A DNA stretch of 64,000 nt, from positions 186,001 to 250,000 of the IMG/VR virus record IMGVR_UViG_3300021137_000001; one strand, 5' to 3'. A program made the position numbers and the translations under genes. The notes under the pieces are model-generated. The model did not search any database, was not told the DNA's origin, and was given only the letters and a program-made list of their open reading frames with translations. Numbering within the stretch: the stretch's first letter is position 1; the number at the start of each line of letters is the position of its first letter. Positions 33,144 to 50,257 of the stretch are shown here, in pieces.

Positions 33144-35834
33144 ATTTCATACGTCGACGCATTATTCGATAGAGCAAAAGATCGCATCTATGTCGTAGAA
33201 AGAAAAGAAGGCATACGTGAGTATGTCGAGTATCCAGCAAATTATGTTATGTACACAGATGATCCAAAAGGCAAGTATCGCACAGTATATGACACACCTG
33301 TAAGTCGTTTTAGCACTCGCATTGGTAAGGAATTCCATAAAGAAACGCGAGTCAATTCAAATAAGAAGATATGGGAAAGCGATATCAATCCTGTATTCCG
33401 TTGTTTATCAGACAACTATCTCGGAGCAACATCCCCTAAGTTACAAACTGCGTTTTGGGATATTGAAACAGACTTTGACCCAGCACGTGGATATGCGCCA
33501 ACTAGCGACCCGTTTAATCCTATTACTGCTATTTCAGTATACTTGGATTGGCTAGACAAGATGGTTACACTTGTTATTCCACCTAAGAGCTATTCATGGG
33601 AAACTGCACAAGAGATTTGTGACCAGTATGAGAACTGCTTTTTGTTTGAGCGTGAAGCAGATATGCTGGATACGTTTCTTAATTTAATCGATGATGCAGA
33701 CGTATTAAGTGGATGGAACAGTGAGGGTTATGATATTCCATACACAGTTGGACGTATTGTACGTGTATTAAGCAAAGATGACACACGACGTCTTTGTCTA
33801 TGGGGTCAGTATCCAAAACAGCGTGAATTTGAACGTTTTGGTGCCACAAGTGTCACCTTTGACCTCATTGGACGTGTCCATTTAGACTACATGCAGTTAT
33901 ACCGCAAATACACATACGAAGAACGACATAGCTATGCGTTAGATGCAATTGGCGAGTATGAGTTAGATGAGCGTAAAGTTGCATACGAAGGTACATTAGA
34001 TCAATTGTATAACAAAGACTTTCCAAAGTTTATTGATTACAACAGACAAGATACTATGTTGCTGGCTAAGTTAGATAAGAAGTTACGCTTCTTAGATTTA
34101 GCTAACGAACTTGCGCATGATAATACTGTATTGCTGCAAACAACAATGGGCGCGGTAGCAGTTACCGAGCAAGCTATCATTAACGAAGCACATCAACAAG
34201 GTCTGATTGTTCCAAATCGCAAGGGCAGAGATGACATGGGCGATACGCAAGCGGCTGGTGCGTATGTCGCAACTCCAAAAGCAGGCATGCATGATTGGAT
34301 TGGGTCAGTCGATATTAACTCACTGTATCCAAGTGCAATTCGTGCGCTTAACATGGGACCAGAATCAATCATTGGACAGATTCGTCCAATTATGACAGAC
34401 CATTATATTACTGAGAAAATGGCAGACAAAATAGTTAATGGCAAAAAATCTAAAGGCTCAAGTTTTGCAGATGCGTGGGACGGACTATTTGCTACATTAG
34501 AATACACCGCAGTCATGGAAGGTAAGACAGGTATTGAGCTTACTATCGATTGGGAAAGCTCAGGCGAGAGTACTGTACACACTGCGGCAGAAGTATGGAC
34601 CTTAATCTTTGATAGTAATCAACCGTGGATACTTAGTGCAAACGGTACTATCTTTAGTTTTGAGAAAGAAGCAGTTATCCCAGGTTTGCTAAAACGTTGG
34701 TATGCTGAACGTAAAGAACTACAGGCTAAAATGCGTTCATGTACAGATCCGGAAGAGATTGCATTTTGGGATAAGCGTCAGTTAGTTAAGAAGATTAACT
34801 TGAACAGTTTGTATGGTGCCTTACTTAATCCGGGCTGTCGTTTCTTTGATAAGCGTATCGGACAGAGTACTACCTTAACAGGCAGAACTATTGCTAAACA
34901 TATGGATGCGTATATTAACGAATGTATTACTGGCACGTACGATCACGTTGGTGATGCAATTATTTACGGTGATACCGACTCATGTTACTTTAGTGCATGG
35001 CCATTAATTAAAGATGAAGTCGAATCCGGTAAGATGGAATGGAGTCCCGAGATTGCAATTCAATTGTATGATGGTATCTCAGACCAAGTTAACGAAAGTT
35101 TTCCAGCAATGATGGAACGTGCATTTCACGTGCCACGCAATATGGGTAATGTAATTAAAGGTGGGCGTGAACTTGTTGCAAGTAAAGGACTATTCATTAA
35201 GAAGAAACGTTATGCTGTATTAATTACAGACTTAGATGGTAAACGTTTAGATACACACGGCAAGCCCGGCAAAGTTAAAGCAATGGGCTTAGACTTAAAA
35301 CGTTCAGATACTCCGAAGATTGTACAAGACTTCTTAAGTGACATCTTACTCGATGTGCTAACAGGTGTAGATAAGACAGATATTATTGATAAGGTGCGTG
35401 AGTTTAAAATTGCATTCCAAGATAGACCTGCATGGGAGAAAGGTACGCCGAAACGTGTAAACAATCTTACTAACTACACAGCGGCTGAAGTTAGAGAAGG
35501 TAGAGCTAATATGCCCGGGCATGTACGTGCGGCAATGAACTGGAATAACTTAAAGCGTATGCATGGTGATAACTATTCAATTAACATTGTTGATGGTATG
35601 AAAACTATTGTGTGTAAACTTAAAGATAATCCAATCGGGTTTACTAGTGTGGGCTATCCAACAGATGGGACACATATTCCGCAATGGTTTAAAGATTTGC
35701 CGTTTGATAATGACTTAATGGAGTCAACAATTGTTAATCAGAAAGTAGAGAACTTATTAGGTGTGCTTAACTGGGATATTGCCGGAAGCACAGACATTAA
35801 GACTACATTTGATGCATTGTTTAGTTTTGACTAA
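33144..35834 (+). CDS. Family B DNA polymerase (gp43-like), probable ATT start
   Basis: ExoI WDIETD, DINSLYPS, KINLNSLYG, YGDTDS, KKRYA; frame open to ATT 33144, which is 6 nt after AAGGAG; the track starts at ATG 33249. Confidence 0.93.
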   Translation: MSYVDALFDRAKDRIYVVERKEGIREYVEYPANYVMYTDDPKGKYRTVYDTPVSRFSTRIGKEFHKETRVNSNKKIWESDINPVFRCLSDNYLGATSPKLQTAFWDIETDFDPARGYAPTSDPFNPITAISVYLDWLDKMVTLVIPPKSYSWETAQEICDQYENCFLFEREADMLDTFLNLIDDADVLSGWNSEGYDIPYTVGRIVRVLSKDDTRRLCLWGQYPKQREFERFGATSVTFDLIGRVHLDYMQLYRKYTYEERHSYALDAIGEYELDERKVAYEGTLDQLYNKDFPKFIDYNRQDTMLLAKLDKKLRFLDLANELAHDNTVLLQTTMGAVAVTEQAIINEAHQQGLIVPNRKGRDDMGDTQAAGAYVATPKAGMHDWIGSVDINSLYPSAIRALNMGPESIIGQIRPIMTDHYITEKMADKIVNGKKSKGSSFADAWDGLFATLEYTAVMEGKTGIELTIDWESSGESTVHTAAEVWTLIFDSNQPWILSANGTIFSFEKEAVIPGLLKRWYAERKELQAKMRSCTDPEEIAFWDKRQLVKKINLNSLYGALLNPGCRFFDKRIGQSTTLTGRTIAKHMDAYINECITGTYDHVGDAIIYGDTDSCYFSAWPLIKDEVESGKMEWSPEIAIQLYDGISDQVNESFPAMMERAFHVPRNMGNVIKGGRELVASKGLFIKKKRYAVLITDLDGKRLDTHGKPGKVKAMGLDLKRSDTPKIVQDFLSDILLDVLTGVDKTDIIDKVREFKIAFQDRPAWEKGTPKRVNNLTNYTAAEVREGRANMPGHVRAAMNWNNLKRMHGDNYSINIVDGMKTIVCKLKDNPIGFTSVGYPTDGTHIPQWFKDLPFDNDLMESTIVNQKVENLLGVLNWDIAGSTDIKTTFDALFSFD

Positions 35835-36760
35835 TGGGTAAATTAGCAGACTTAGTTAAGTATAGAAACGAGTTAACCAGTGCAGTCAACTCGTTAAATC
35901 TGCAGAAAGCAATCACTAAGAAAATTACGTTATTAGACCAAGTACAAGGAAATAATGCCGTAGCGTATAATGTCGATCATATTACTAACAATTATAAACA
36001 ACTAATACTAGATAACGATAGTAATATCAATCAGCTAAATGAATTAATAGAATTAGTTAATTTGGATATTACTATCCTAGCAACAACATTATTTGCGAAT
36101 AGAGAATTATTAGCATATACTGGCCGAATCGACTTGCCGTTTGAGTCGGATCTCAGACTACTTGTTAAAACTAAAATTAAACAATATTGTGATTGGCATT
36201 ATCCAGGTTTACAAATTAATTCCGACAAAAAAGAATGGGTCGATTGTATGGTAACTTCTGATCCGCTGTATCTCGCTAATTCGAATGAGGCTACGGCAGT
36301 TAGAGAATTAACGGATATAATTAGTGAATATCCAGATCAATATCAAAATCGGTTACGATTATATCCAATCGATGGTCGAGATTTTTCTATACTACCACAA
36401 GAACAGTTTAGTGTTATAGTGTGTTGGAACTTCTTAGATTATATTGAACTCAAAGGTATTACAGAATATATGCAACAAATGTTTAAATTGCTACGAGCAG
36501 GCGGTGTGTTTATGTTTAGCTATAACAACTGCGATATAGTTGAATCTGCTAGATTAGCAGAAGAGAATGGTATGAGTTGGGTAAGCTCACGTGCAATCAA
36601 ACAACTATGCAATGATATTGGGTTCGAAGTTATTACATTTGAGGATCACGAAACTGGCGATGCGTACATTACACAGATTAGTTGGGCAGAAATACGCAAA
36701 CCGGGCGTGTTAACAACAGTAAAGGCGCATCAAGTCGCTGGAAAAATACTTGAAAAATAA
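35834..36760 (+). CDS. Coiled coil plus SAM-dependent methyltransferase-like domain
   Basis: LPQEQFSVIVCWNFLDY..LLRAGGVFMFSY. Confidence 0.6.
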   Translation: MGKLADLVKYRNELTSAVNSLNLQKAITKKITLLDQVQGNNAVAYNVDHITNNYKQLILDNDSNINQLNELIELVNLDITILATTLFANRELLAYTGRIDLPFESDLRLLVKTKIKQYCDWHYPGLQINSDKKEWVDCMVTSDPLYLANSNEATAVRELTDIISEYPDQYQNRLRLYPIDGRDFSILPQEQFSVIVCWNFLDYIELKGITEYMQQMFKLLRAGGVFMFSYNNCDIVESARLAEENGMSWVSSRAIKQLCNDIGFEVITFEDHETGDAYITQISWAEIRKPGVLTTVKAHQVAGKILEK

Positions 36761-36832
36761 TTACCATATGACTTGCATTTTCTAAATACATCATATACAC
36801 TATACATTACATTACTTTATTAGGAGAACTAC

Positions 36833-37564
36833 ATGCGTGATCAATTATTAGACATCGTTAAAAATACTTACGGACTGGGTATTATCGATTTAGTTAAAGT
36901 AACAGGAACAGATTCAGAAACAACAATCGAAGCAATTGCAGAAGATCGTAGTGTTATAGTGCAGGCAAAAGTAAACAATCCAGTACCGGAGTTCATCGGT
37001 ACATTTGGTATGCCAAACTTAGGTAAACTAAGTACAATTCTCGGTATTCCAGAGTACAAGGAAGATGCTAAGATTAGCTTAACTAAACAAGATCGTAATG
37101 GCGAATCAGTTCCGTCGGGCTTACATTTTGAAAACAAATCAGGTGACTTTAAAAATGATTATCGTTTTATGACATCTGAAATTGTTAACGACAAACTTAA
37201 AACAGTTAAGTTCAAAGGTGTTAAATGGAATGTTGAATTTCAACCAACAGTTGCTAACATTCAACGTTTGAAATTCCAAGCAAGTGCAAACAGTGACGAA
37301 ACTACGTTCACTGCTAAAACAGAAGGTACTGACTTAAAACTATTCTTCGGTGATCATAGTTCACATGCTGGTAACTTTGTGTTTCAAGCAGATGTTGTTG
37401 GTACGTTAACTAAAGGTTGGTCATGGCCAGTAGCGGCAGTTATTAGTATCCTTAGTTTGCCAGGTGATAAAACATTCCGTATTAGTGACGAGGGTGCGGC
37501 ACAAATTACTGTTGATAGCGGTATGGCAACTTATAACTACATTTTACCTGCACAAAGCAAATAA
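36833..37564 (+). CDS. Probable sliding clamp (gp45-like processivity factor)
   Basis: 243 aa, two-lobed beta/alpha pattern, FGMPNL, ends YNYILPA; located beside PolB. Confidence 0.6.
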   Translation: MRDQLLDIVKNTYGLGIIDLVKVTGTDSETTIEAIAEDRSVIVQAKVNNPVPEFIGTFGMPNLGKLSTILGIPEYKEDAKISLTKQDRNGESVPSGLHFENKSGDFKNDYRFMTSEIVNDKLKTVKFKGVKWNVEFQPTVANIQRLKFQASANSDETTFTAKTEGTDLKLFFGDHSSHAGNFVFQADVVGTLTKGWSWPVAAVISILSLPGDKTFRISDEGAAQITVDSGMATYNYILPAQSK

Positions 37565-37906
37565 ATGATCAAGTCAATCCAATCATTGTCGCCACATGTA
37601 ACTGTTGACCATTATAGTCCACCATATGTTGGTGGTAATTCTCAGTCAGCTGGGCAGATGCGGTTTAATACTAATACGCAACAAGTAGACGTATACGATG
37701 GCAATAGTTGGATTAGCATGAGTCAAAATGTTAATGTTAGAATGAGTTACACTGCCGAAGAAGCTATTCGGTGGGCTACTATTAAGATGCAGGAAGAGAA
37801 CGAACTTAAAGCTAAAATGGAAAAATACCCAACGTTAAAATCAGCTTATGAACAATATAAGCTAGTTGAGGCGTTGGTTTATGAGGATGATAAAGTTGGA
37901 ACGTGA
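37565..37906 (+). CDS. Hypothetical protein
   Basis: GQMRFNTNTQQVDVYDGNSW motif plus a helical tail. Confidence 0.65.
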   Translation: MIKSIQSLSPHVTVDHYSPPYVGGNSQSAGQMRFNTNTQQVDVYDGNSWISMSQNVNVRMSYTAEEAIRWATIKMQEENELKAKMEKYPTLKSAYEQYKLVEALVYEDDKVGT

Positions 37907-39590
37907 TAATTTAACAGCAAAACAACTCGGAGAAAACAATACATCGGGGTTGAGTCAGTGGAGTGTCTTTTTACCAGCACTGTCTGGCTTTTATGCAACG
38001 TATGTGGGAAAGCAACGCTTCCCTGATCCAGTAAAAGGATTGTATGTTGATGCAACTCGTATGCCGCCAGACTTTGAAAATGGTATGGAAGGGCTCAACT
38101 GGCTTAATCCAGAACAAGCATACTTTCCGTATCATTGGTCATTATATTCTGCAGGTCATGCTGAATTAGATGTTAACAAGTTTAGTCCAAAAGAAGATAT
38201 GGTTCGTAACAGAGATCGTAGTAAATCGTTTATTCTCGGTGACAGTGGTGGGTTCCAGATTGGTAAAGGTGTATGGGAAGGTGATTGGAAGAATCCTAAC
38301 TGTCCTAAAGCACAAAAGAAACGTGAGCTAGTGTTAACTTGGATGGATGCATATATGGATTATGGTATGTGTTTGGATATTCCAGCGTGGGTTGCTCGTA
38401 GTCCAAACGGTGCTAAAGCTACAGGTATTAGCACATACGAAGAAGCTGTACAAGGCACATACATTAATAATGATTGGTTTATTAATAATCGTACAGGTGC
38501 TTGTAAGTTTCTAAACGTATTGCAGGGCGAAAACCATACAGATGCAGACGATTGGTATGATCGTATGAAGAAGTATTGCGACCCTGTACAATATCCAGGC
38601 CGCCATTTTAATGGATGGGCAATGGGCGGGCAAAATATGTGTGATGTACATTTAGTACTTCGCAGACTTGTTGCATTACGCTTTGATGGCTTGTTAGAAA
38701 AAGGTTTGCATGATTGGATGCACTTTTTGGGTACAAGTAAACTAGAGTGGGCAGTGCTATTAACTGACATTCAACGTGCTGTCCGTAAATATCACAACCC
38801 TAACTTTACAATATCATTTGATTGTGCTAGTCCGTTCTTAGCAAGTGCTAACGGACAGATTTATACTCAAACAGAAGTTGAAGATGGTAAGAAATGGGTA
38901 TATCGTATGGTACCAAGTGTAGACAATAAGAAATATGCACTAGATACACGTAGATTCCGTGATGCAGTATTACAAGATGGTAAATTTAAAACGTTTACTG
39001 AAAGCCCAATTAGCGCACGTATTCAAATTAATGATGTGTGTGTATATCACGATGGTGTGCGTAAAACTAAAGCAGAATTAAACGGTGAAGAGTTTGATGT
39101 AACTAATCAAAATCATTATAGCACACCGCCAGCACTTAATAAGATTAATAAGGTTGGCAAAACATCATGGGATAGCTTTGCGTATGCTATTCAAATGGGT
39201 CATAATGTTTGGAGTCATCTTACTTCTGTACAAGAAGCAAACAGACAATATGATAAAGGTATTCGTCCTGCAATGATGTCAGCAATTACAGCAGATAAGA
39301 AATCACATAGAGCATATGATTTAATCTATTTTAGAGACATTGTTGATGCTATATTTGCAATCGACAATAGAGCCGATGCAGAAGCACTAATCGAACACTA
39401 TAATCAATATTGGATGGCTATTCCTGGTTCGCGTGGCGCAATTGGTAAGAAAACAATGAATGCCAGTACTACGTTTAATAGCTTGTTTGATGAAGTTGCA
39501 GTACCAGAAACAGAAGAAGAGCATCACATAGATGACAGTGGATTTGACGAAACTAATCTTAATAACTTAGAAGCAGGTTTGGAGGAATAA
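37887..39590 (+). CDS. dpdA: TGT-family transglycosylase, DpdA-like (7-deazaguanine insertion into DNA)
   Basis: LGDSGGFQ, LDIP, NVLQG, GWAMGG, HFLG, SFDCAS; clustered with folE/queD/queE; start may be TTG 37896. Confidence 0.75.
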   Translation: MIKLERDNLTAKQLGENNTSGLSQWSVFLPALSGFYATYVGKQRFPDPVKGLYVDATRMPPDFENGMEGLNWLNPEQAYFPYHWSLYSAGHAELDVNKFSPKEDMVRNRDRSKSFILGDSGGFQIGKGVWEGDWKNPNCPKAQKKRELVLTWMDAYMDYGMCLDIPAWVARSPNGAKATGISTYEEAVQGTYINNDWFINNRTGACKFLNVLQGENHTDADDWYDRMKKYCDPVQYPGRHFNGWAMGGQNMCDVHLVLRRLVALRFDGLLEKGLHDWMHFLGTSKLEWAVLLTDIQRAVRKYHNPNFTISFDCASPFLASANGQIYTQTEVEDGKKWVYRMVPSVDNKKYALDTRRFRDAVLQDGKFKTFTESPISARIQINDVCVYHDGVRKTKAELNGEEFDVTNQNHYSTPPALNKINKVGKTSWDSFAYAIQMGHNVWSHLTSVQEANRQYDKGIRPAMMSAITADKKSHRAYDLIYFRDIVDAIFAIDNRADAEALIEHYNQYWMAIPGSRGAIGKKTMNASTTFNSLFDEVAVPETEEEHHIDDSGFDETNLNNLEAGLEE

Positions 39591-39591
39591 C

Positions 39592-39777
39592 ATGGATAAA
39601 GGCAAACTCGAAAGTCATATCGAACGCTTAGTACAGCACCACGCAGATCTCGAACTGCAAATTAAAGAAGGGCGTAGTAACTATGTTGGCGATGCTAAAC
39701 TTAGCAAAGTTAAGCAAGAAAGATTAATTGTTAAGCGTCAAATTGAAGAATCTAAAACAAAATTAAAGGCACTATAA
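39592..39777 (+). CDS. Small coiled-coil protein (YdcH/DUF465-like)
   Basis: L..H..LE..I...K.ERL.VK..IE pattern; GGAGG SD. Confidence 0.6.
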   Translation: MDKGKLESHIERLVQHHADLELQIKEGRSNYVGDAKLSKVKQERLIVKRQIEESKTKLKAL

Positions 39778-40658
39778 TGAAAAGTTTAGTTATTGGTATG
39801 GGTATTGGTAATTTGTATCATGAAGTACTTACAAATTTAGGATATGAAATCGTAACCGTAGATCAAGATGCAACAAAAAATGCAGACTTTACCAGTGTTG
39901 CACTTGCACTAGCATCACATGAATATTTTGACACAGTGCATATCTGCACACCAAACTTTACACACGAAGCTATCGCGAGAGAAGTTGCTACCCATGCTAA
40001 ACTTGTATTCATCGAAAAGCCAGGAGTTAAAACTTCGGCAATTTGGCAACAGCTAGTCAAAGACTTTCCATATACACGTTTTATGATGGTTAAGAACAAT
40101 CAATGGCGTGAAAATATTGCAGAGTTACAAGCACTTGCGCAACGTAGTGTTAAAGTGGAACTTAATTGGATTAATCGTAATCGTGTTCCTGGTCCAGGTA
40201 CTTGGTTTACTACTAAAGAGTTAGCATATGGCGGTGTTAGCCGTGATTTGATGACACACTTGTTAAGTCTTTATATAGCACTTAGCGAAGATTATACTAA
40301 GCCAGCATTAACTCATTATAACGTAGCACAACGTTATACATTGGCAGAAGTGTCTGATACAGAATACGGTACGGTTAAGGCAGATGGTATATATGACGTA
40401 GATGATTTATGTGAATTTATATTTGAATCTCCCGAGCGTAAGTGGCGTTTAGTAGCAGACTGGCGCAATTTAACTGACGATGACCGCGGTATTAACTTTC
40501 ATATGGCAGACGGTAAAGTCGAACGTTTTGAATTAGGATTGTGCCCAGCAGAAGCATACCAAGCAATGATTAAAGATGCTGTTGAAAACATTGACAACGA
40601 TGCTTGGTTTAGTGTACAATTAGACTATGACTTATGGATTCATGGAAAGGTAGAATAG
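39777..40658 (+). CDS. Gfo/Idh/MocA-family NAD-dependent oxidoreductase
   Basis: IGMGIG, ICTPNFTH, IEKPG, GGVSRDLMTH. Confidence 0.85.
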   Translation: MKSLVIGMGIGNLYHEVLTNLGYEIVTVDQDATKNADFTSVALALASHEYFDTVHICTPNFTHEAIAREVATHAKLVFIEKPGVKTSAIWQQLVKDFPYTRFMMVKNNQWRENIAELQALAQRSVKVELNWINRNRVPGPGTWFTTKELAYGGVSRDLMTHLLSLYIALSEDYTKPALTHYNVAQRYTLAEVSDTEYGTVKADGIYDVDDLCEFIFESPERKWRLVADWRNLTDDDRGINFHMADGKVERFELGLCPAEAYQAMIKDAVENIDNDAWFSVQLDYDLWIHGKVE

Positions 40659-40659
40659 C

Positions 40660-41556
40660 TTGAGAGTTAAATTATTATGCACAGATGGCCTAGGCACATT
40701 CCAAGAAATTGCGTGGGATAAGCCAGCAATTAACAACAACGAAATTGAAGTTAAAGCAGTAATGACGGGTGTTTGTCGTAGTGACATCGATATGATGAAT
40801 GGCGAGTTTGGCCCATTGCCTATTCATATGCACGGACACGAAGGATTAGGCATTGTAACTAAAGTGGGTGCTAACATAACTGATGTAGAAGTAGGCAATT
40901 ATGTTGCTACCCGTGGTGAACCTGCTTATGCGGATTATTACAATGTACGCAAAGACGAATATGTCGGGGTACCCACATCAGAACCTAAATACATATTAGA
41001 ACCTGTTGCTTGTGGTATCAACGTAGTAAATCAAAATTTACGTGATGTTGCCGAACGTGCTGGCGAAGGTCGACGCTTGTTGATATTAGGCAGTGGCTTC
41101 CTTGCGTGGGTTGCGTATAATACATTGTTGATTAACCATTTAGAATTCGATATTACAGTGATTGGTCGTAGTAATCAAGACTTATGGCAAGGTAAGCTAT
41201 CTCATGAAATTACTGGTGTTTATGATGTTATTATTGACTTAACTGAACGCACTGATTACTTACAGGGCGATTGTGTTGCAAATAATGGCTTAATCATTAT
41301 TGGTACAGACAAGCACATTAATCAAACGTTCGGACAGTTAATTTGGAAAGCAGTTACTATTAGTTTTCCAAGTCCACGTACACCACGCTTTTATGAAGCA
41401 ATGGTAATGGCACGTGACTGGGTCGCTAGTGGTCAATTAAATGTTGACAAATTCTGGACAAAGTCGTATAATCGTAATACAGAGTGGCAATCTGCATTTG
41501 CAGATGGCCAAAACAGACCAGTAGGCTACAGCAGAGGATATATTAAGTGGGATTAA
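40660..41556 (+). CDS. Zn-dependent MDR alcohol/sugar dehydrogenase
   Basis: GVCRSD, GHEG.G.V..VG, LEPVAC, ILGSG; TTG start. Confidence 0.85.
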   Translation: MRVKLLCTDGLGTFQEIAWDKPAINNNEIEVKAVMTGVCRSDIDMMNGEFGPLPIHMHGHEGLGIVTKVGANITDVEVGNYVATRGEPAYADYYNVRKDEYVGVPTSEPKYILEPVACGINVVNQNLRDVAERAGEGRRLLILGSGFLAWVAYNTLLINHLEFDITVIGRSNQDLWQGKLSHEITGVYDVIIDLTERTDYLQGDCVANNGLIIIGTDKHINQTFGQLIWKAVTISFPSPRTPRFYEAMVMARDWVASGQLNVDKFWTKSYNRNTEWQSAFADGQNRPVGYSRGYIKWD

Positions 41557-42068
41557 ACACAGAAGAAAGACAGGAGGTAGTTTACTTTACAGGATTTGAA
41601 GTAGAGCATACTATTTGCTATGGTATGAAAACTTTGTTTGTTGTAGGTACTCCGCCAGTGGCAGAAATTATAGAAAAAGCTGAAACAAACGAATGTAAGC
41701 ATATTTACTTTGGCACAAGTCAAAGTTTCAATCCTACAGCAATGACACAGGAAGAATATAAACCATGGGATGATGTCATTATTGAATGTTTAAAGAATGA
41801 CTATTGGGTTAGCTTAGACTTTGGTGTTGAACATATCGAAGGTGTTATCGAAAGTGGCTATTCAGAATACGCTAGATTTGTTCCTATGATTAGTGTTAAA
41901 TTGCCGTATATCAGCTTACTTAATTATAATGCAACACTTAAACTTGATGACATTACTTGGGGCAAAACAAACCCTGGTGTATGGACACATCATTTACAAA
42001 CGCTAATGGGTAAAGATAAATTTACCCATTGGGATCAATATACACAAGATACTTCAATCGATCTATAA
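41547..42068 (+). CDS. Hypothetical protein in the modification cluster
   Basis: GTG start; EVEHT, HIYFG, KLDD..NPGVW. Confidence 0.7.
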   Translation: MGLNTEERQEVVYFTGFEVEHTICYGMKTLFVVGTPPVAEIIEKAETNECKHIYFGTSQSFNPTAMTQEEYKPWDDVIIECLKNDYWVSLDFGVEHIEGVIESGYSEYARFVPMISVKLPYISLLNYNATLKLDDITWGKTNPGVWTHHLQTLMGKDKFTHWDQYTQDTSIDL

Positions 42069-42079
42069 AGGATTGCAAA

Positions 42080-42592
42080 ATGAATAAAAGTTTCTTTTTA
42101 TATTTACATAATGATTTAAGCGGAAACCCGGCTTGGAAAAAGGTGGGAATAGGAATGACTCCGTATTCCGTTGTGAGATCTAGACAAAAATTTTGTTCTG
42201 ACAGATTTGGATTAACTCATTTATTTTTCGGTGATCCTAGCCATATTGCTTTTTTAGAAAAAGAATTTAAAGATAAATTTTTTCATAATTCGGGTACATA
42301 CATTAATAAAATAAGTGCGCAAACAGAATTATTTAATATGGCAGAAGAAGATATTTTGTTAGCAATTAACAATATCATTAAAATTAATGAATTACATATA
42401 AAGAAATTAGATTTAGCAGTACCGTATTCTGCTGCAAATAGTGGCGAATGTCCGTACAATATACCTTCAGAAGCCGAGTCTCATAATCATTTACGAGATT
42501 TGATTATCGAAGAATGGGATACTATAGTAGTAAGAGGTAAAACATCAAAGGCATCTATTAGATTTTCAAAATTATTCGAGGAAGTAGAATGA
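42080..42592 (+). CDS. GIY-YIG/T5orf172-like hypothetical protein
   Basis: FLYL..WKKVGI..R, TELF; AAGGA SD before ATG 42080. Confidence 0.5.
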   Translation: MNKSFFLYLHNDLSGNPAWKKVGIGMTPYSVVRSRQKFCSDRFGLTHLFFGDPSHIAFLEKEFKDKFFHNSGTYINKISAQTELFNMAEEDILLAINNIIKINELHIKKLDLAVPYSAANSGECPYNIPSEAESHNHLRDLIIEEWDTIVVRGKTSKASIRFSKLFEEVE

Positions 42593-42993
42593 TACAAGCA
42601 GAACGTGAAAAGATAGAACGTATTAAGTCTAATGGAATACGTACAACTTATATTAAAGTTAGAACTGAATTTGAGGGATTTCATTACTACCCTAACGCAG
42701 GTACTATTGATTCGCGTATCAAATTTCTTGAGAATGAACATCGACATATATTCAAAGTTGAAGTGAAAATATCAGTTACGCACCTCGACCGTGAGTTAGA
42801 ATTTTTCTTAGTTAAATGGGCGTTACAAGAATTTATTAAAGCAGGTAATCAAAATCACAAATCGTGTGAGATGATTGCTGTTAACATTTTAGAAAATCAT
42901 TTAATACCATTGTATGGTAATAGATCGTATACTGTAATAGTGTCCGAGGATGGGGAATCAGATGGTATCATTGAATTTGATCCACAGATTTGA
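42589..42993 (+). CDS. Divergent QueD/PTPS-like T-fold protein
   Basis: FEGFH, HRHIF, RELEF, SCEMIA, VSEDGE. Confidence 0.6.
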   Translation: MIQAEREKIERIKSNGIRTTYIKVRTEFEGFHYYPNAGTIDSRIKFLENEHRHIFKVEVKISVTHLDRELEFFLVKWALQEFIKAGNQNHKSCEMIAVNILENHLIPLYGNRSYTVIVSEDGESDGIIEFDPQI

Positions 42994-43705
42994 TTAATGC
43001 ATCTAGAGTAATAGAACATTGTGTGCGTTTAGACCTATTGTCTAATTTCGGAAGTAATTCTAAATTAACATAATGACCTATAATCTCCGGAGAAATATTT
43101 TGTTTAAATCCTTCTGTAATGCTAAATTTGTGATCTAATTCAAATTTTGTACCTCTTTCTAAATTTTGAGGATTAATTTTATTTTGATGATGCGTCCAAC
43201 TCTTATAAGTATGATTAAGGACTTGTTCTCTATATAATTCCCATTCACTTTTTTGTTCTTTAGGAATAGCAATGCCATTTTTAATTTTTGTATTAGTTGC
43301 TTCTGAATAACATACAGGATCTCGACCATTGGCTTTAGCAGATTGTTTTTGTTTAGTTTCGATGCTATGAGTTTTTCCGTACATTGGATTATTAACTCCG
43401 CTGTGCCCGCCACGAAACCTAACTGCTTTAGAGATAGTACTTCCTTTATTCGCAAGCCAGTCGCTATCAGTATGGAGTTGTTTAAGAACAGCATTGCCTT
43501 TCTCGCTCATCTGTTTCATATGAGCTTTCCGTTGTTCAGGAGTAGTATTTTTATCCCGAGATGCTTGCGCTTTTTTAATAAATCCCGGGCATTGGGTAAT
43601 TTTTTCAACACATCTCATTTTTTTGGAGTTATAACTTATGTAAAAGGCTTGACATTCACACAAATAACATGTATTATTAACATTAACAGTAGTAAGTTTA
43701 GGCAT
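42968..43705 (-). mobile_element. Free-standing HNH homing endonuclease with NUMOD3
   Basis: N-terminal Cys cluster, NNPMYGKTHSIETK, ELDHKFS..NLELL..DNRSK; overlaps the 3' end of the neighbouring gene. Confidence 0.75.
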
Positions 43706-43764: not shown

Positions 43765-43992
43765 GTGGCAAATCCAGTTTGGCTTAAGAAGTACCTAGTA
43801 ATGAAACCAGATGTAAGACAAATTTTTAACGATTTAGATGCATGGTGCAACTATTGTCGCTTCCATATGATTAAGTATGATGAAGCAGACTTGTACACGT
43901 CACAAGCGTACAAGGAATGGCAAGAGAAGCGCAAACGCCGTGAGCAATGGCGTCAGCAACAAGGGCATCCAGGTTACCAAGGACGTAAATAG
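43765..43992 (+). CDS. Hypothetical protein
   Basis: AAGGAG SD, GTG start, IFNDLDAWCNYCR..YDEADLY. Confidence 0.75.
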   Translation: MANPVWLKKYLVMKPDVRQIFNDLDAWCNYCRFHMIKYDEADLYTSQAYKEWQEKRKRREQWRQQQGHPGYQGRK

Positions 43993-43993
43993 T

Positions 43994-45085
43994 ATGACCG
44001 TTTACATCGTTGATTTAGAGGCGGTGGACAGTAGGTACACGGGTCAATGGAAAACTCATGTGCCTACTTTGCTTGAAGAACATGGTCATGAAGTATATGT
44101 GATTAATGGTCCTCACGATATTCCGGCTGCAACAACTCCTGGTGCATTCCTTAACTTTGGTGGTACTAACATTTACAAGGCCGCACAGGTTGAGAAAATG
44201 GCTAGACTATTTACTGAAGGACAAATTCATAAAGGTGATCACTTCATCTTTACAGATGCATGGCATCCTGGCATTATCAACTTGAAGTATATGAGTGAGC
44301 TATTACAGATTCCTGTAACTATTCACGCACTATGGCATGCTGGCAGTTACGACCCGCAAGACTTTTTAGGTCGTTTGATTGGTAATAAATCGTGGGTAAG
44401 ACATGCAGAGAAAAGTTTCTTTGCGGCAATTGATCATAACTACTTTGCAACAGACTTTCATATTGATATGTTCTGTGCTAACTTACTTAATGATGGCTTA
44501 TGTGAAAATCCGTGGGCGGCTGAAGATCGAGCAGATATGATTGCTGAAGGTAAGATTGTGCGTAGCGGTTGGCCTATGGAATATATGCCAACAGTACTTG
44601 CGCCATTTAAGAATTTAGAGAAACGTGACTTAATTCTGTTTCCGCATCGTATAGCACCAGAGAAGCAAGTAGAAATCTTTAAGAATCTTGCAAAAACATT
44701 ACCGCAATATGAATGGATTGTCTGTCAGGAAGAACAACTCACTAAAGATGAGTATCATACATTGTTAGGTGAAGCTAAGTTAGTGTTTAGCGCAAACTTA
44801 CAAGAAACACTTGGTATTAGTATGTATGAAGGTGCGTTAGTAAGTGCTATACCGATGGTGCCCGATAGACTCAGCTATCGTGAAATGTTCGATGATACGT
44901 GGAGGTATCCAAGCAAGTGGACTGAATCGTTTGAAAGTTACTTACATCATAAAGAATGTGTGTGTAATTTGATTAATGAATATATGAATAATTACAGTGA
45001 ATATGCTCCGTTAATTCCACAGCAAGCACACAATTTGCATACTAATTTCTTCTCAGCAACTGAAATAATAAAGAATGTCATTTAA
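43994..45085 (+). CDS. GT-B (GT4-like) glycosyltransferase
   Basis: FPHRIAPEKQ, QETLGISMYEG, PDRLSY; ATG 43994 preferred as start. Confidence 0.8.
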   Translation: MTVYIVDLEAVDSRYTGQWKTHVPTLLEEHGHEVYVINGPHDIPAATTPGAFLNFGGTNIYKAAQVEKMARLFTEGQIHKGDHFIFTDAWHPGIINLKYMSELLQIPVTIHALWHAGSYDPQDFLGRLIGNKSWVRHAEKSFFAAIDHNYFATDFHIDMFCANLLNDGLCENPWAAEDRADMIAEGKIVRSGWPMEYMPTVLAPFKNLEKRDLILFPHRIAPEKQVEIFKNLAKTLPQYEWIVCQEEQLTKDEYHTLLGEAKLVFSANLQETLGISMYEGALVSAIPMVPDRLSYREMFDDTWRYPSKWTESFESYLHHKECVCNLINEYMNNYSEYAPLIPQQAHNLHTNFFSATEIIKNVI

Positions 45086-45656
45086 TGCAATAGCAAAGTT
45101 TGAACAGGCTTTAGGTGAACTTACAGGCGCACCTTTTGTTGTTATGACAGATTGTTGCACACATGCACTAGAACTGTGTCTACGTTACGAGAAGGTAAAA
45201 CGATGTCGTTTTAGTGCATTTACCTACCTTTCTGTGCCAATGACCATGCATAAACTGAACATTTCGTATGGTTTAACAGCCGATAATGAATGGGTCGGAG
45301 AATATCCTATACTTGGTACACGGATATGGGATAGTGCAAGATTGTTGCGTATGGGTATGTATCGTGCGGGACAAATGCAGTGCTTGAGCTTTGGATATAG
45401 CAAACCGTTAGACATTGGGCGTGGTGGTGCAATACTCCTAGACGATGAAGTTGCGTATAACAAACTTATACAGCAACGCAGTGATGGCCGAGACCTGCGT
45501 ATTGCTCCGTGGCAAGATCAAAAAGTATTTGAAGTGGGTTATCATTATAGACCAACTATAGAAGAAGCAGTAAGAGCATTAGAAAAATTACTAACCATCA
45601 ATCAAGAACCTAAATACATTAAGTATCCAGACTTACGTGAAATTATTATCAAATAA
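45075..45656 (+). CDS. Short DegT/DnrJ-family PLP aminotransferase
   Basis: CTHALEL, TYLS, IWDSA, LSFGYSKPL..GRGGAI. Confidence 0.8.
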   Translation: MSFNAIAKFEQALGELTGAPFVVMTDCCTHALELCLRYEKVKRCRFSAFTYLSVPMTMHKLNISYGLTADNEWVGEYPILGTRIWDSARLLRMGMYRAGQMQCLSFGYSKPLDIGRGGAILLDDEVAYNKLIQQRSDGRDLRIAPWQDQKVFEVGYHYRPTIEEAVRALEKLLTINQEPKYIKYPDLREIIIK

Positions 45657-45733: not shown

Positions 45734-46435
45734 ATGTCAGACATAAAATATTCAGTAAGTCAATCAGTTCGCGAAAACTTAAAAGCACACAATAAACGTT
45801 TTTGGGCAGGTGACAACATCTCAGAATTCATCAGTGAATCTACTAAAGAAATGCTTATAGACGAAGCCACCGTAGCGTTTGAAGGTGTATTAGATGCATT
45901 GCTAATTGATCGCGAGAATGATCCAAACAGTAAAGGTACAGCACGTAGACTTGCTAAGATGTACTACACAGAGATTATGGCTGGACGTTACGAATTAGCA
46001 CCAGATGCAACAGCGTTTCCAAATGATTCAGAAGATCGTTACGAAGGTATGCTAGTTGTACGTAGCGAACTTAAAAGCATGTGCAGTCATCATCACCAAC
46101 CAGTTTCCGGAGTCGCATACATTGGTATTATTGCTGCGCACAAACTAATCGGACTTAGTAAGTATACACGTATTGCACAATGGTGCGCCACCCGTGGTAC
46201 ATTACAAGAAGAACTATGTAATGATATCTCAAAAGAAATTATGAATGCAACAGCAAGTGAGAATGTAGCAGTTTATATCCAAGCGACACACGGTTGCTGT
46301 GAGAATCGCGGCATTATGGCACATAGTTCATTGACTCAAACTACAGTACTCAAAGGTGCGTTTAATACTGATCCTGGTACTAAGCAAGAATTCTTTGATA
46401 ATGTAAAACTACAACAGCAGTTTGCTCCAAGATAA
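45734..46435 (+). CDS. folE: GTP cyclohydrolase I
   Basis: SMCSHH, IGLSKY.R, LQE, HGCCENRG. Confidence 0.95.
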   Translation: MSDIKYSVSQSVRENLKAHNKRFWAGDNISEFISESTKEMLIDEATVAFEGVLDALLIDRENDPNSKGTARRLAKMYYTEIMAGRYELAPDATAFPNDSEDRYEGMLVVRSELKSMCSHHHQPVSGVAYIGIIAAHKLIGLSKYTRIAQWCATRGTLQEELCNDISKEIMNATASENVAVYIQATHGCCENRGIMAHSSLTQTTVLKGAFNTDPGTKQEFFDNVKLQQQFAPR

Positions 46436-46444
46436 GGAATAAGT

Positions 46445-46804
46445 ATGTTTAAGAGATGGTTAATACGTTTAGCAGATAAATGGCGCATAAATGACTGGGA
46501 AGATACTGTGCCAGAACCCAAACAAGTCTGGGGCGGTGGGCGTAAACAGCGTAAGCAGACACTTAGTAGTGGGATGAATAGTTCAACACTAACATCTAAG
46601 TCACATCACCGGGTATCACACAACTACGACGACGATGGAGTAATTACATTTAAAGTGTATAGTGCAAATGGTGGCAAGATAGTTGAGGCATCACGTTACG
46701 ATAACAATCGAGACAACGAAGTTATTAAACTGTATATTATTGAAGAAAATGCAGACTTTACAGAATCGTTGGCTAAAATTGTTACAATGGAGTATTTACG
46801 ATGA
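46445..46804 (+). CDS. Hypothetical protein
   Basis: FKVYSANGGKIVE..YD. Confidence 0.7.
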   Translation: MFKRWLIRLADKWRINDWEDTVPEPKQVWGGGRKQRKQTLSSGMNSSTLTSKSHHRVSHNYDDDGVITFKVYSANGGKIVEASRYDNNRDNEVIKLYIIEENADFTESLAKIVTMEYLR

Positions 46805-47295
46805 ATAAGATTGAAAAAGTATATTATGGTGATGTACACGTTAGAGATATGATTAGCGATATCTCTATGAAAATGCATCGTGACAATTGGAAACCCGATT
46901 ACATTGTTGGGTTAACACGTGGCGGATTGATTCCAGCAGTGTATCTAAGTCACTATCTTGATGTTCCAATGGAAACATTAAAAGTAAGTTTGCGTGATAA
47001 TGCAGATACCGAAAGTAACTTATGGATGGCAGAAGATGCGTTTAATGGTAAAAACATTCTTATCGTAGACGACATTAATGACACCGGTGCTACGTTAGAT
47101 TGGATTATCAATGATTGGCAAAGCAGTTGCTTACCAGATGACCCACATTGGGAACATGTGTGGGGAGATAATGTTAGAATAGCGGTATTAGTTGATAATT
47201 TAAGTAGTAACTTTAGTTGTCAAGTAGACTATTGTGCTGTTGAGATTAACAAAGCAGAAAAAGATGTATGGATTGTTTACCCATGGGAAAGATAG
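46801..47295 (+). CDS. Type I phosphoribosyltransferase (Gpt-like)
   Basis: GLTRGGLIP, LIVDDINDTGAT, WIVYPWE. Confidence 0.92.
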   Translation: MNKIEKVYYGDVHVRDMISDISMKMHRDNWKPDYIVGLTRGGLIPAVYLSHYLDVPMETLKVSLRDNADTESNLWMAEDAFNGKNILIVDDINDTGATLDWIINDWQSSCLPDDPHWEHVWGDNVRIAVLVDNLSSNFSCQVDYCAVEINKAEKDVWIVYPWER

Positions 47296-49408: not shown

Positions 49409-50257
49409 ATGAAATTAAAAGTTAGTGAGATATTTTATTCAGCGCAAGGTGAAGGACGCTTTATTGGCGTTCCGTCGTTATTTCTGCGTACATTTGGCTG
49501 TAACTTTACCTGCGGTGGCTTTGGTATGCCACGCGGCACAGTTAGTGCAGAGCGCAATGTAATTAAAGTCGAACAATACAAGTCGTACAATGACCTACCA
49601 CTTGTTAATACAGGGTGCGATAGTTACGCAAGCTGGGATCCGAAATTTAAAAGTTTAAGTCCGTTATTATCTATAGACGAAACAGTTAAGCAAATGCTTG
49701 ATGTTATTCCCAATAACAATTGGCAACAAACAAATGGTAATAACGTGCATTTAGTTATTACAGGCGGTGAGCCGTTATTAGGATGGCAACGTGCGTTTCC
49801 TAAGTTGTTAGATCATGCTGATATGGCAAACTTACAGAATCTTACGTTTGAAACAAACGGCACACAGGCGTTACATGCAGACTTTGCTAGATATTTACAA
49901 GTATGGTCTGCTACACGTGGAGAAGTTACATTTAGTGTAAGCCCTAAACTATCAGCAAGTGGGGAAACTTGGGAAGATGCTATTAAACCCGAGATTGTAA
50001 ACAGTTACGAGTTTGCTGGTACAACGTATCTCAAGTTTGTTATCGAAACACCAAATGACTTCGATGAAGTTGATCGCGCTGTAGTTGCATATAGAACAGC
50101 AGGCTTTACTGGTATGGTTTATGTTATGCCTGTTGGTGGTGTTGTTAGCGTATATGATGGTAACAAGTTCCATATTGCAGACGAAGCAATGAAACGCGGT
50201 TATTATTACAGTCCACGACTTCATATCGAACTTTGGGGCAATTCTTGGGGAAAATGA
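49409..50257 (+). CDS. queE: 7-carboxy-7-deazaguanine synthase
   Basis: EIFYSAQGEG..G.P.LFLRTFGCN..C, GCDS, VITGGEP, FETNG, SVSPKL, PRLH. Confidence 0.9.
   Translation: MKLKVSEIFYSAQGEGRFIGVPSLFLRTFGCNFTCGGFGMPRGTVSAERNVIKVEQYKSYNDLPLVNTGCDSYASWDPKFKSLSPLLSIDETVKQMLDVIPNNNWQQTNGNNVHLVITGGEPLLGWQRAFPKLLDHADMANLQNLTFETNGTQALHADFARYLQVWSATRGEVTFSVSPKLSASGETWEDAIKPEIVNSYEFAGTTYLKFVIETPNDFDEVDRAVVAYRTAGFTGMVYVMPVGGVVSVYDGNKFHIADEAMKRGYYYSPRLHIELWGNSWGK

What the first reader, a model, noticed from the sequence alone, without database searches (positions are those of the whole stretch)
35802..42592. DpdA-like enzyme shares PolB's C-terminal TTFxxLF motif: possible clamp-tethered DNA modification
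Seen: PolB ends KTTFDALFSFD (35802-35834). The TGT-like protein has STTFNSLFDE (about 39465-39494) before an acidic tail. ORF 42080-42592 ends IRFSKLFEEVE. The probable clamp gene lies between PolB and dpdA. Established: T4/RB69 gp43, gp33 and gp55 dock on the gp45 clamp through a C-terminal SLDFLF-like peptide. Inference: base exchange is coupled to the replication fork via the clamp, which also argues for a DNA rather than tRNA substrate.
Basis: partly seen in the sequence, partly recalled or inferred. Interest (0 to 1): 0.65.

Follow-up and report, generated by a model that had tools for sequence, protein, structure and literature searches.

The report
Clamp-docking tail on phage DNA-modifying enzyme
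In this 329-kb jumbo phage, a very divergent guanine-swapping (TGT/DpdA-like) enzyme carries the same short tail motif that its DNA polymerase uses to grip the sliding clamp. This suggests the phage attaches its DNA-modifying enzyme to the replication machinery.

Summary
PolB (33249-35834) ends TTFDALFSFD. The 574-aa protein (37866-39590) has TTFNSLFDE 33 residues before its end. ORF 42080-42592 ends FSKLFEEVE.

- **Conservation.** Each motif is kept in that protein's relatives: PolB 71/71 loci, the 574-aa family 115/120 close kin plus many 30-60%-identical representatives, and about 28/35 for the third ORF. It recurs in cultured phages PA5oct and Phosso.
- **Clamp.** The 243-aa protein (36833-37564) folds as a PCNA/gp45-type clamp. 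A gp44/RFC-like clamp loader is encoded elsewhere in the genome.
- **Enzyme.** The 574-aa protein has no Pfam, NCBIfam, PHROG or PADLOC hit. It folds as a TGT barrel (Z 17-18) and keeps both catalytic aspartates, but lacks the TGT zinc site.
- **Docking.** The motif lies in a disordered stretch. A complex prediction places it in the canonical clamp pocket (0.72 versus best control 0.01).
- **Context.** FolE, QueD-like and QueE-like genes are nearby, and QueC is absent.

Best reading: a new DpdA-like clade tethered to the clamp. Binding and the DNA substrate are inferred, not shown. A conserved phosphoribosyltransferase and phage GUN-anticodon tRNAs keep rival readings open.

The parts
33249..35834 (+). 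Family B DNA polymerase of the T4/RB69 gp43 type, 861 aa
   Evidence: Pfam DNA_pol_B 1.9e-34 and the exonuclease domain; PHROG 262 at 7.6e-183. The nearest solved structures are RB69 and T4 gp43, E 5e-59.
35802..35831 (+). PolB C-terminal motif TTFDALFSFD, a hydrophobic-acidic clamp-binding type
   Evidence: Read directly. Invariant F..LF.F in 71 PolB orthologues. PA5oct PolB ends HFDSLFGW and Phosso PolB ends TTFNDLFTF.
35834..36760 (+). SAM-methyltransferase-like protein, 308 aa; role unknown
   Evidence: Pfam Methyltransf_23 at 1.5e-9. Present in 20 of the related loci.
36833..37564 (+). Two-domain PCNA/gp45-type sliding clamp, 243 aa
   Evidence: AF2 pLDDT 83, pTM 0.82. The 50 Foldseek matches printed are all sliding clamps (PCNA, ASFV clamp, DnaN), best E 7e-11, TM about 0.66. 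No sequence-level family hit except PHROG 12062, function unknown. 37% identical to the PA5oct homologue, with the interdomain loop and YILPA C-terminus conserved. The Phosso homologue is annotated as a sliding clamp.
37565..37906 (+). 113-aa ORF of unknown function between the clamp and the TGT-like gene
   Evidence: A small ORF sits at the same position in PA5oct.
37866..39590 (+). Divergent TGT-superfamily (DpdA-like) base-exchange enzyme. 574 aa from the longest ORF; the true start is probably 10-25 codons downstream.
   Evidence: AF2 pLDDT 89.9. Foldseek top hits are all TGT, E 4e-6. VIA Z 17-18 over about 300 residues against bacterial, archaeal and eukaryotic TGT. hhalign to E. coli Tgt aligns DSGGFQ, LDxP, QG, GG and FDC. 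D126, S127, G129, Q131, H286, G289 and D319 are invariant in 59 diverse members. No Pfam, NCBIfam, PHROG, PADLOC or PDB-sequence hit.
39468..39494 (+). TTFNSLFDE motif in a disordered stretch (residues 535-543): the proposed clamp-docking peptide
   Evidence: pLDDT below 50 for residues 526-550. Conservation. The predicted interface is partner residues 533-546 against clamp residues 39-42, 119, 123-130, 196, 220-222 and 237-242.
39495..39587 (+). Optional acidic tail with a second conserved element (EEHH.DDSG[LF]DE..L..LE)
   Evidence: Conserved in many kin and in PA5oct, but absent where the protein ends just after the motif. Function unexplained.
42080..42592 (+). 170-aa GIY-YIG/T5orf172-like protein (a lead only) ending FSKLFEEVE
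   Evidence: About 28 of 35 homologues at 41-79% identity keep a C-terminal [FYW]xx[LF]F. The family lead comes from Atlas features, 0.92-0.93. No Pfam hit. Absent from the 80 syntenic loci.
42589..42993 (+). QueD/PTPS-like protein, 134 aa
   Evidence: PHROG 17812. Conserved in 62 related loci. The QueD/PTPS assignment rests on sequence reading and on the PTPS gene reported for PA5oct.
45734..46435 (+). GTP cyclohydrolase I (FolE)
   Evidence: NCBIfam FolE models, 6e-38, below the curated cut-offs.
46801..47295 (+). Phosphoribosyltransferase, 164 aa, a conserved member of the module
   Evidence: Pfam Pribosyltran 9e-16. Found in 39 related loci, including PA5oct.
49409..50257 (+). QueE-like (7-carboxy-7-deazaguanine synthase) homologue
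   Evidence: 33% identical to the annotated PA5oct QueE, E 2.8e-27. ORF.

Best explanation
The 574-aa protein is a member of a large, previously unannotated clade of the tRNA-guanine-transglycosylase superfamily found in jumbo phages. It most likely exchanges guanine in phage DNA for a 7-deazaguanine base made by the neighbouring FolE, QueD-like and QueE-like genes. Because QueC is absent, that base is probably at the 7-carboxy-7-deazaguanine (CDG) stage or a derivative of it. After the catalytic domain comes a flexible stretch carrying [ST]-x-[FY]-x-x-L-F-[DE], the same hydrophobic-acidic peptide that ends the phage's gp43-type polymerase. This peptide docks in the pocket between the two clamp domains, under the interdomain loop and beside the clamp's C-terminus. 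The enzyme would then ride on clamps loaded during replication and scan new duplex processively.

Shown here: the motifs and their conservation, the clamp fold, the TGT fold and catalytic residues, and the synteny.

Predicted in silico: the docking.

Inferred: the DNA substrate, the identity of the base, and the timing relative to the fork.
For: - Motif conservation in PolB and the TGT-like family across 60-92% identity loci and across 30-60% identity representatives.
- PA5oct has the pair HFDSLF (PolB) and SFNSLFDV (TGT-like). Phosso has TTFNDLFTF and a terminal IVEGLF.
- The motif sits in a disordered stretch, survives insertions before it, and survives loss of the acidic tail.
- Clamp fold. 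Clamp loader in the genome.
- Complex prediction gave 0.72 against a best control of 0.01. That mark was reached by 58 of 80 solved complexes and 2 of 110 mismatched pairs. Runs agreed in at least 52% of contacts, and partner pLDDT was at least 45. The interface is exactly the motif and the canonical clamp pocket.
- TGT fold and aligned catalytic Asp residues.
- Synteny of PolB, clamp and TGT-like: 80 of 82 loci carry the clamp and 73 carry PolB within 10 kb.
- Deazapurine genes are nearby, QueC is absent, and no canonical TGT is encoded.
- PA5oct DNA resists enzymes whose sites contain G, and no transglycosylase has been named for it (PMC12191111).
- In T4, gp43, gp55 and gp33 share interchangeable hydrophobic-acidic clamp-binding C-termini on variable linkers (PMC2988020).
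- Two motif-less distant relatives lie in bacterial islands without a phage replisome.
Against: - No physical binding data exist. The complex model may score well from memory of PCNA-peptide complexes, and the partner's own pLDDT is only 45-48.
- Only the TGT-like tail was modelled. PolB and the third ORF were not.
- No family model recognises the enzyme, and the canonical TGT zinc site is absent in 0 of 59 members, so activity is an inference.
- The phage encodes GUN-anticodon tRNAs (Tyr, His, Asp) that a tRNA-TGT could use.
- A conserved phosphoribosyltransferase in the module allows a nucleotide-level, pre-replicative route.
- The only phage precedent, T4 alpha-glucosyltransferase with gp45, was not reproduced in a 2025 preprint.
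- The PA5oct clamp homologue is annotated 'structural protein' from virion mass spectrometry. That list also includes non-virion enzymes.
Confidence: 0.6

Rival explanations
1. The enzyme is a tRNA-guanine transglycosylase acting on phage or host GUN-anticodon tRNAs. Its C-terminal motif would then serve some other purpose.
For: The fold and catalytic residues are those of tRNA-TGTs. The genome encodes tRNA-Tyr(GTA), tRNA-His(GTG) and tRNA-Asp(GTC).
Against: The motif equals the polymerase's clamp peptide and is predicted to dock on the clamp. The gene is syntenic with PolB and the clamp, and in Phosso with primase and DnaB. PA5oct DNA itself has modified G. The zinc site of tRNA-TGTs is missing.
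Confidence: 0.12
2. The modified base enters DNA before replication. The conserved phosphoribosyltransferase would turn the free deazapurine into a nucleotide that PolB incorporates. The clamp-tethered TGT-like enzyme would then have a secondary role, such as editing, topping up, or removing unmodified G.
For: The PRTase at 46801-47295 lies between FolE and QueE and is conserved in 39 loci including PA5oct. From my own knowledge, toyocamycin-type pathways use a PRTase after CDG/preQ0 synthesis.
Against: The published view is that every deazaguanine phage carries a DpdA and that insertion follows replication (PMC10516641). The PRTase could equally salvage the guanine released by base exchange. 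No kinase or reductase steps were looked for.
Confidence: 0.15
3. The shared F-x-x-L-F peptide binds another common partner, such as the clamp loader, SSB or a helicase, and not the clamp.
For: No binding assay exists. T4 replisome proteins also use short acidic or hydrophobic tails for other contacts (my own knowledge).
Against: PolB is of the gp43 type, whose C-terminus is the known clamp peptide. The complex model places the motif in the canonical clamp pocket, with controls at 0.00-0.01. The pocket residues are conserved in PA5oct.
Confidence: 0.08
4. The resemblance is a chance match between unrelated tails.
For: Five-residue motifs are short, and the finding was made post hoc.
Against: The motif is independently conserved in three protein families and in three distant cultured phage lineages. 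It stays put while the linker and tail vary.
Confidence: 0.03

Closest known systems
T4/RB69 gp45 clamp with the C-terminal peptides of gp43, gp55 and gp33
   Same: A trimer-type two-domain clamp and a gp43-type polymerase. Several proteins share a short hydrophobic-acidic C-terminal peptide on a variable, unstructured linker, and the peptide sits in the hydrophobic pocket on the clamp's C-face (PMC2988020).
   Different: The clamp has no detectable sequence similarity to gp45. The clients here are a base-exchange enzyme and a GIY-YIG-like protein, not transcription factors. In many members the motif is internal and followed by an acidic tail.
Phage DpdA DNA transglycosylases (DpdA1-4), especially DpdA3 of Cellulophaga phage phiST and Campylobacter phages
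   Same: TGT-superfamily enzymes beside FolE, QueD and QueE. QueC is missing, as in DpdA3 phages, and the gene lies near the polymerase gene (PMC10516641).
   Different: Twice the size of DpdA3 (574 versus 259 aa), with only marginal profile similarity (87.8%, 86 columns). No DpdA or TGT model hits it. The phiST DpdA3 has no such tail motif. No clamp link is reported for any DpdA in the searched literature.
Bacterial and archaeal tRNA-guanine transglycosylase (Tgt, ArcTGT)
   Same: A (beta/alpha)8 barrel at Z 17-18. DSGGFQ, the substrate-binding Asp and the FDC nucleophile Asp all align.
   Different: 14-16% identity. No CxCxxC zinc site. Extra insertions and a C-terminal docking tail. The context is replisome genes.
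Clamp-tethered DNA-modifying or repair enzymes (DNMT1-PCNA and UNG2-PCNA from my own knowledge; T4 alpha-glucosyltransferase-gp45)
   Same: The concept of a DNA-modifying enzyme recruited to newly replicated DNA through a clamp-binding peptide.
   Different: The chemistry differs: base exchange rather than methylation, excision or glucosylation. The T4 case was not reproduced in a recent preprint (bioRxiv 10.64898/2025.12.06.692756).

Membership tests
TGT superfamily (Pfam PF01702) | (beta/alpha)8 TGT barrel fold | tested here: met
   AF2 pLDDT 89.9. The Foldseek top 50 are all TGT, E 4e-6. VIA Z 17-18, about 300 residues aligned.
TGT superfamily (Pfam PF01702) | Catalytic Asp in DSGGFQ and nucleophile Asp in the FDC motif, plus the substrate-binding Asp | tested here: met
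   hhalign to E. coli Tgt aligns all three. D126 and D319 are invariant and D171 is present in 58 of 59 diverse members.
TGT superfamily (Pfam PF01702) | Structural zinc site CxCxxC...H | tested here: not met
   No CxCxxC in any of 59 members. Only one Cys (39/59) and the His (53/59) are kept.
TGT superfamily (Pfam PF01702) | Score above the curated family threshold | tested here: not met
   No hit for the window protein. Two of 59 relatives reach only E 0.043. No PF01702 match anywhere in the genome.
DpdA (DNA 7-deazaguanine transglycosylase) | Inserts a 7-deazaguanine base into DNA | not testable with these tools
   Indirect only: PA5oct, which carries the orthologue, has restriction-resistant G-modified DNA (PMC12191111).
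DpdA (DNA 7-deazaguanine transglycosylase) | Encoded with 7-deazaguanine synthesis genes | tested here: met
   FolE, QueD-like and QueE-like are in the window, and QueC is absent. The same module occurs in related loci and PA5oct.
DpdA (DNA 7-deazaguanine transglycosylase) | Sequence kinship with a described DpdA subfamily | tested here: inconclusive
   hhalign to phiST DpdA3 gives 87.8% and E 3e-6 over only 86 columns. No DpdA model of PADLOC matched any of the 59 members.
PCNA/gp45-type sliding clamp | Two topologically repeated domains with the clamp fold | tested here: met
   the 50 Foldseek matches printed are all sliding clamps, and at least 500 matches passed E 0.001.
PCNA/gp45-type sliding clamp | A cognate AAA+ clamp loader is encoded | tested here: met
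   A 309-aa protein at genome 179419-180348 hits AAA, DNA_pol3_delta2, Rad17 and the RFC1 lid.
PCNA/gp45-type sliding clamp | Forms a closed trimeric ring on DNA | not tested
Clamp-binding peptide (T4 gp43/gp55/gp33 type, PIP-like) | Short hydrophobic-acidic motif at or near the C-terminus, on a variable unstructured linker, shared with the replicative polymerase | tested here: met
Clamp-binding peptide (T4 gp43/gp55/gp33 type, PIP-like) | Docks in the hydrophobic pocket under the interdomain loop | tested here: inconclusive
   In silico only: 0.72 against a best control of 0.01, with contacts at clamp 123-130 and 237-242 and partner 533-546. No measurement.

The most novel reading that the evidence does not exclude
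A whole clade of jumbo-phage guanine transglycosylases is wired into the replisome through the polymerase's own clamp peptide. The clade has more than 900 clusters at 50% identity and includes the missing enzyme behind PA5oct's modified G. Base exchange would then happen on clamp-marked nascent DNA. The same 'toolbelt' would also carry a GIY-YIG-like nuclease. This would be the first clear case of clamp-coupled DNA hypermodification in a phage, and a route to high-level G replacement by a post-replicative enzyme.
Probability: 0.45. Interest if true: 0.8.

Novelty: new variant of a known kind. Interest (0 to 1): 0.68.

Why it matters
Deazaguanine DNA modification is held to be post-replicative. 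How a base-exchange enzyme can modify a large share of the G's in a huge genome within one infection cycle is unexplained. A clamp tether gives a testable mechanism.

The finding also supplies a candidate for the unnamed transglycosylase of PA5oct-like phages, which are cultured, used in phage-therapy work, and targeted by END nucleases. It defines a very large unannotated TGT clade in marine viromes. It extends the phage clamp 'toolbelt' beyond polymerase and transcription factors, at a time when the one earlier phage example (T4 alpha-GT with gp45) has been questioned.

Tried and rejected
- **Sequence annotation of the 574-aa protein.** Pfam, NCBIfam, PHROGs, PADLOC and PDB searches (single sequence and profile) gave nothing usable. 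Only fold and profile-profile comparisons worked.
- **Nucleotide search.** Megablast of the region against the phage collection found nothing.
- **A third motif carrier.** The 99-aa ORF after the clamp loader has NTFEELF, but this drifts in more distant homologues and looks like part of a helix. I do not count it as a clamp peptide.
- **Other C-terminal matches.** Other [FY]xx[LMF]F matches in the genome are unconvincing; one of them is in a ClpP protease.
- **DpdA3 tail.** The phiST DpdA3 has no such motif. The Vibrio phage GR11A TGT-like protein has only an ambiguous TLF followed by an acidic run.
- **Context of distant motif-bearing kin.** Look-ups for P0312, P0279, P0252 and P0378 returned contigs too short to be informative.
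- **Phosso beta-clamp idea.** I considered that Phosso might use a beta-type clamp, which could explain its variant tail. It has the same clamp family and no credible DnaN, so I dropped the idea.
- **Not used.** No alternative genetic code was used. No read mapping was done.
- **Big protein search.** It was used once, because the family scans left the protein open.

Full report
**What the window is.**
The window is bases 186001-250000 of a single 329,321-bp contig. IMG/VR classes it as a complete virus with direct terminal repeats. Its nearest cultured relatives are distant: the Pseudomonas jumbo phage PA5oct group (34% identity for the protein in question), Sinorhizobium phage Phosso, and a Vibrio jumbo phage. 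Thousands of close relatives occur in marine and other metagenomes.

**Checking the observation.**
All three peptides are present as described.
- PolB (33249-35834) ends TTFDALFSFD.
- The 574-aa ORF (37866-39590) has TTFNSLFDE at residues 535-543, followed by 31 mostly acidic residues.
- ORF 42080-42592 ends FSKLFEEVE.

In a crude 435-gene proteome of the whole genome, F..LF occurs nine times. Six are within the last 45 residues of a protein. TF..LF occurs three times, always C-terminal.

Conservation is the real test, and it holds.
- Among 120 close homologues of the 574-aa protein, 115 keep F..[LF]F in the tail. The five exceptions keep aromatic-x-x-x-F.
- Among representatives at 30-60% identity, many end in [FY]xx[LM]F or xxLF. 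This is either the very C-terminus or is followed by an acidic run.
- In 80 IMG/VR loci, PolB ends [TN]-T-F-x-x-L-F-x-F with F, L and F essentially invariant. The TGT-like protein of the same genomes carries [ST]-x-[FY]-x-x-L-F-[DE].
- In about twenty loci the enzyme stops two to four residues after the motif.
- In others a 20-residue insertion precedes the motif, and it is still kept. This is how a short linear docking motif behaves, not part of a fold.
- PA5oct shows the same pairing: PolB ..HFDSLFGW and enzyme ..SFNSLFDV...
- So does Phosso: PolB ..TTFNDLFTF and enzyme ending ..IVEGLF.
- The third ORF was absent from the syntenic loci. It has 35 homologues elsewhere, and about 28 of them end in [FYW]xx[LF]F.

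**The clamp.**
The 243-aa protein has no Pfam, NCBIfam or PDB-sequence match. It folds with pLDDT 83 into two repeated beta-alpha-beta-beta-beta domains. Foldseek returned at least 500 matches at E 0.001 or better; the 50 printed are all sliding clamps, mostly PCNA, with best E 7e-11 and TM about 0.66.

A gp44/RFC-like AAA+ clamp loader lies at genome 179419-180348. Phosso's annotators had already called the homologue a sliding clamp. PA5oct's is labelled 'structural protein' only because it was seen by mass spectrometry of virions. That list also contains non-virion enzymes.

**The enzyme.**
No family library recognises it. The exhaustive search found 922 clusters at 50% identity. With 59 diverse members, the AF2 model reaches pLDDT 89.9.
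- Foldseek's top 50 are all tRNA-guanine transglycosylase.
- VIA-align gives Z 17-18 over about 300 residues to bacterial, archaeal and eukaryotic TGTs.
- Profile comparison with E. coli Tgt (E 5e-6) aligns DSGGFQ, the LDxP aspartate, QG, GG, the H/Y-x-[LM]-G strand and the FDC aspartate.
- D126, S127, G129, Q131, H286, G289 and D319 are invariant in the family.
- A Vibrio phage 'TGT domain-containing protein' bridges at E 2.5e-12.

Differences from known enzymes:
- The TGT zinc motif is absent in all 59 members.
- Similarity to the phiST DpdA3 is marginal: 86 columns, 87.8% probability.

The protein is therefore a TGT-superfamily enzyme of a new clade. It is not demonstrably a member of any named DpdA subfamily.

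**Docking.**
Residues 526-550 are disordered in the monomer model. I folded the clamp with residues 515-574.
- The score was 0.72 (three runs: 0.73, 0.72, 0.51) against a best control of 0.01.
- That mark was reached by 58 of 80 solved complexes and 2 of 110 mismatched pairs.
- Runs agreed in at least 52% of contacts, and partner pLDDT was 45-48.
- My own alignments were used, so the calibration counts hold only roughly.
- The confident contacts are partner residues 533-546 (the motif) with clamp residues 39-42, 119, 123-130, 196, 220-222 and 237-242. These are the interdomain connector and the C-terminal tail, which is the canonical pocket for clamp ligands.
- Those clamp segments are conserved in the 37%-identical PA5oct protein.

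The tool warns that such a pass can reflect memory of PCNA-peptide complexes. It supports likeness of mode but does not show binding.

**Context and substrate.**
The conserved module is PolB, clamp, TGT-like gene, a 402-aa protein (a candidate glycosyltransferase), QueD-like, FolE, phosphoribosyltransferase, QueE-like. QueC is absent and there is no other TGT. This resembles DpdA3 phages, which stop at 7-carboxy-7-deazaguanine (PMC10516641).

PA5oct DNA resists enzymes cutting at G-containing sites. That paper named QueE and PTPS genes, but no transglycosylase (PMC12191111). This favours DNA as the substrate.

Two points weigh against certainty:
- The phage encodes tRNA-Tyr, tRNA-His and tRNA-Asp with GUN anticodons.
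- The conserved phosphoribosyltransferase could feed a nucleotide-level route. It could equally just salvage the guanine released by base exchange.

**Comparison with what is known.**
In T4, the polymerase, gp55 and gp33 share interchangeable hydrophobic-acidic clamp-binding C-termini on variable linkers (PMC2988020). PolB here is of that type, with RB69 and T4 gp43 as the nearest structures.

A clamp-linked DNA-modifying enzyme in phage was proposed for T4 alpha-glucosyltransferase, but a 2025 preprint found no interaction. I found no paper linking DpdA or deazaguanine insertion to a clamp. That library is incomplete, so this is absence of evidence only.

**Verdict.**
I put 0.6 on 'clamp-tethered DNA guanine transglycosylase'. 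It is a new variant of known kinds: a TGT/DpdA-type enzyme combined with a clamp-toolbelt peptide.

Two motif-less distant relatives sit in bacterial islands beside a 500-aa partner, one also next to an OGG-like gene. This fits the motif being a phage-replisome adaptation, but two cases are too few to lean on.

Noticed in passing
window 42080-42592: A 170-aa ORF, apparently a mobile insertion between conserved genes and next to a NUMOD3 homing endonuclease at 42968-43705 (minus strand). It looks GIY-YIG/T5orf172-like by Atlas features and by an FLY..(10)..VGIG pattern. Its family keeps a C-terminal FxxLF. It may be a clamp-tethered nuclease.
   Followed up: partly
genome 180348-180647 (L086:4348-4647), 5.3 kb upstream of the window: A 99-aa ORF directly after the gp44/RFC-like clamp loader, at the position of T4 gp62, contains NTFEELF. 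This is the only other TF..LF in the proteome. The motif drifts in distant homologues and is probably helical.
   Followed up: partly
window 46801-47295 and 47296-49368: A phosphoribosyltransferase (conserved in 39 related loci and in PA5oct) and a 690-aa B12-binding radical-SAM protein (found in 3 loci) lie between FolE and QueE. They hint at a nucleotide-level step, guanine salvage, or further tailoring of the deazapurine.
   Followed up: partly
whole genome: There is no QueC (PF06508) although FolE, QueD-like and QueE-like genes are present. The pathway seems to stop at 7-carboxy-7-deazaguanine, as in DpdA3 phages.
   Followed up: partly
window 39495-39587: A second conserved tail element follows the motif (EEHH.DDSG[LF]DE..L..LE), with a counterpart in PA5oct. 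It is absent in a subset of kin. The AF2 model gives it a short strand and a helix at pLDDT 55-77. Its function is unexplained.
   Followed up: partly
L167:6678-10360 and L170:7689-11389: Motif-less distant relatives of the TGT-like protein lie in bacterial islands. Each is paired divergently with a protein of about 500 aa plus a further gene of 222 or 257 aa, and the 257-aa one is OGG-like. Integrase genes lie in L167. This may be a bacterial DNA-modification or defence cassette.
   Followed up: partly
window 39777-41556, 43877-45085, 45075-45656: Sugar-chemistry-like genes sit among the deazapurine genes: a GFO/IDH/MocA oxidoreductase, a zinc-ADH-like protein, a 402-aa protein conserved in 54 loci (Phosso annotates a glycosyltransferase in the corresponding region), and a short DegT-type aminotransferase fragment. 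The base may be decorated further.
   Followed up: no
genome 117294-123356: A cluster of 13 tRNA genes, including Tyr(GTA), His(GTG) and Asp(GTC), which are potential queuosine-type substrates.
   Followed up: partly
L001:2620-7846 (PA5oct): The PA5oct PolB is split by a Hef-like homing endonuclease gene. Its clamp homologue is annotated 'structural protein', and PA5oct's own paper never mentions a clamp.
   Followed up: partly
L086:2880-3236 and genome 143009-143629: The phage encodes a GroES/Cpn10-like protein and a ClpP protease.
   Followed up: no
window 37866-37920: The TGT-like ORF's TTG start overlaps the preceding ORF, and homologues align only from residue 10-25. The true start is probably a downstream ATG, so residue numbers used here may be 5-20 too high.
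   Followed up: no
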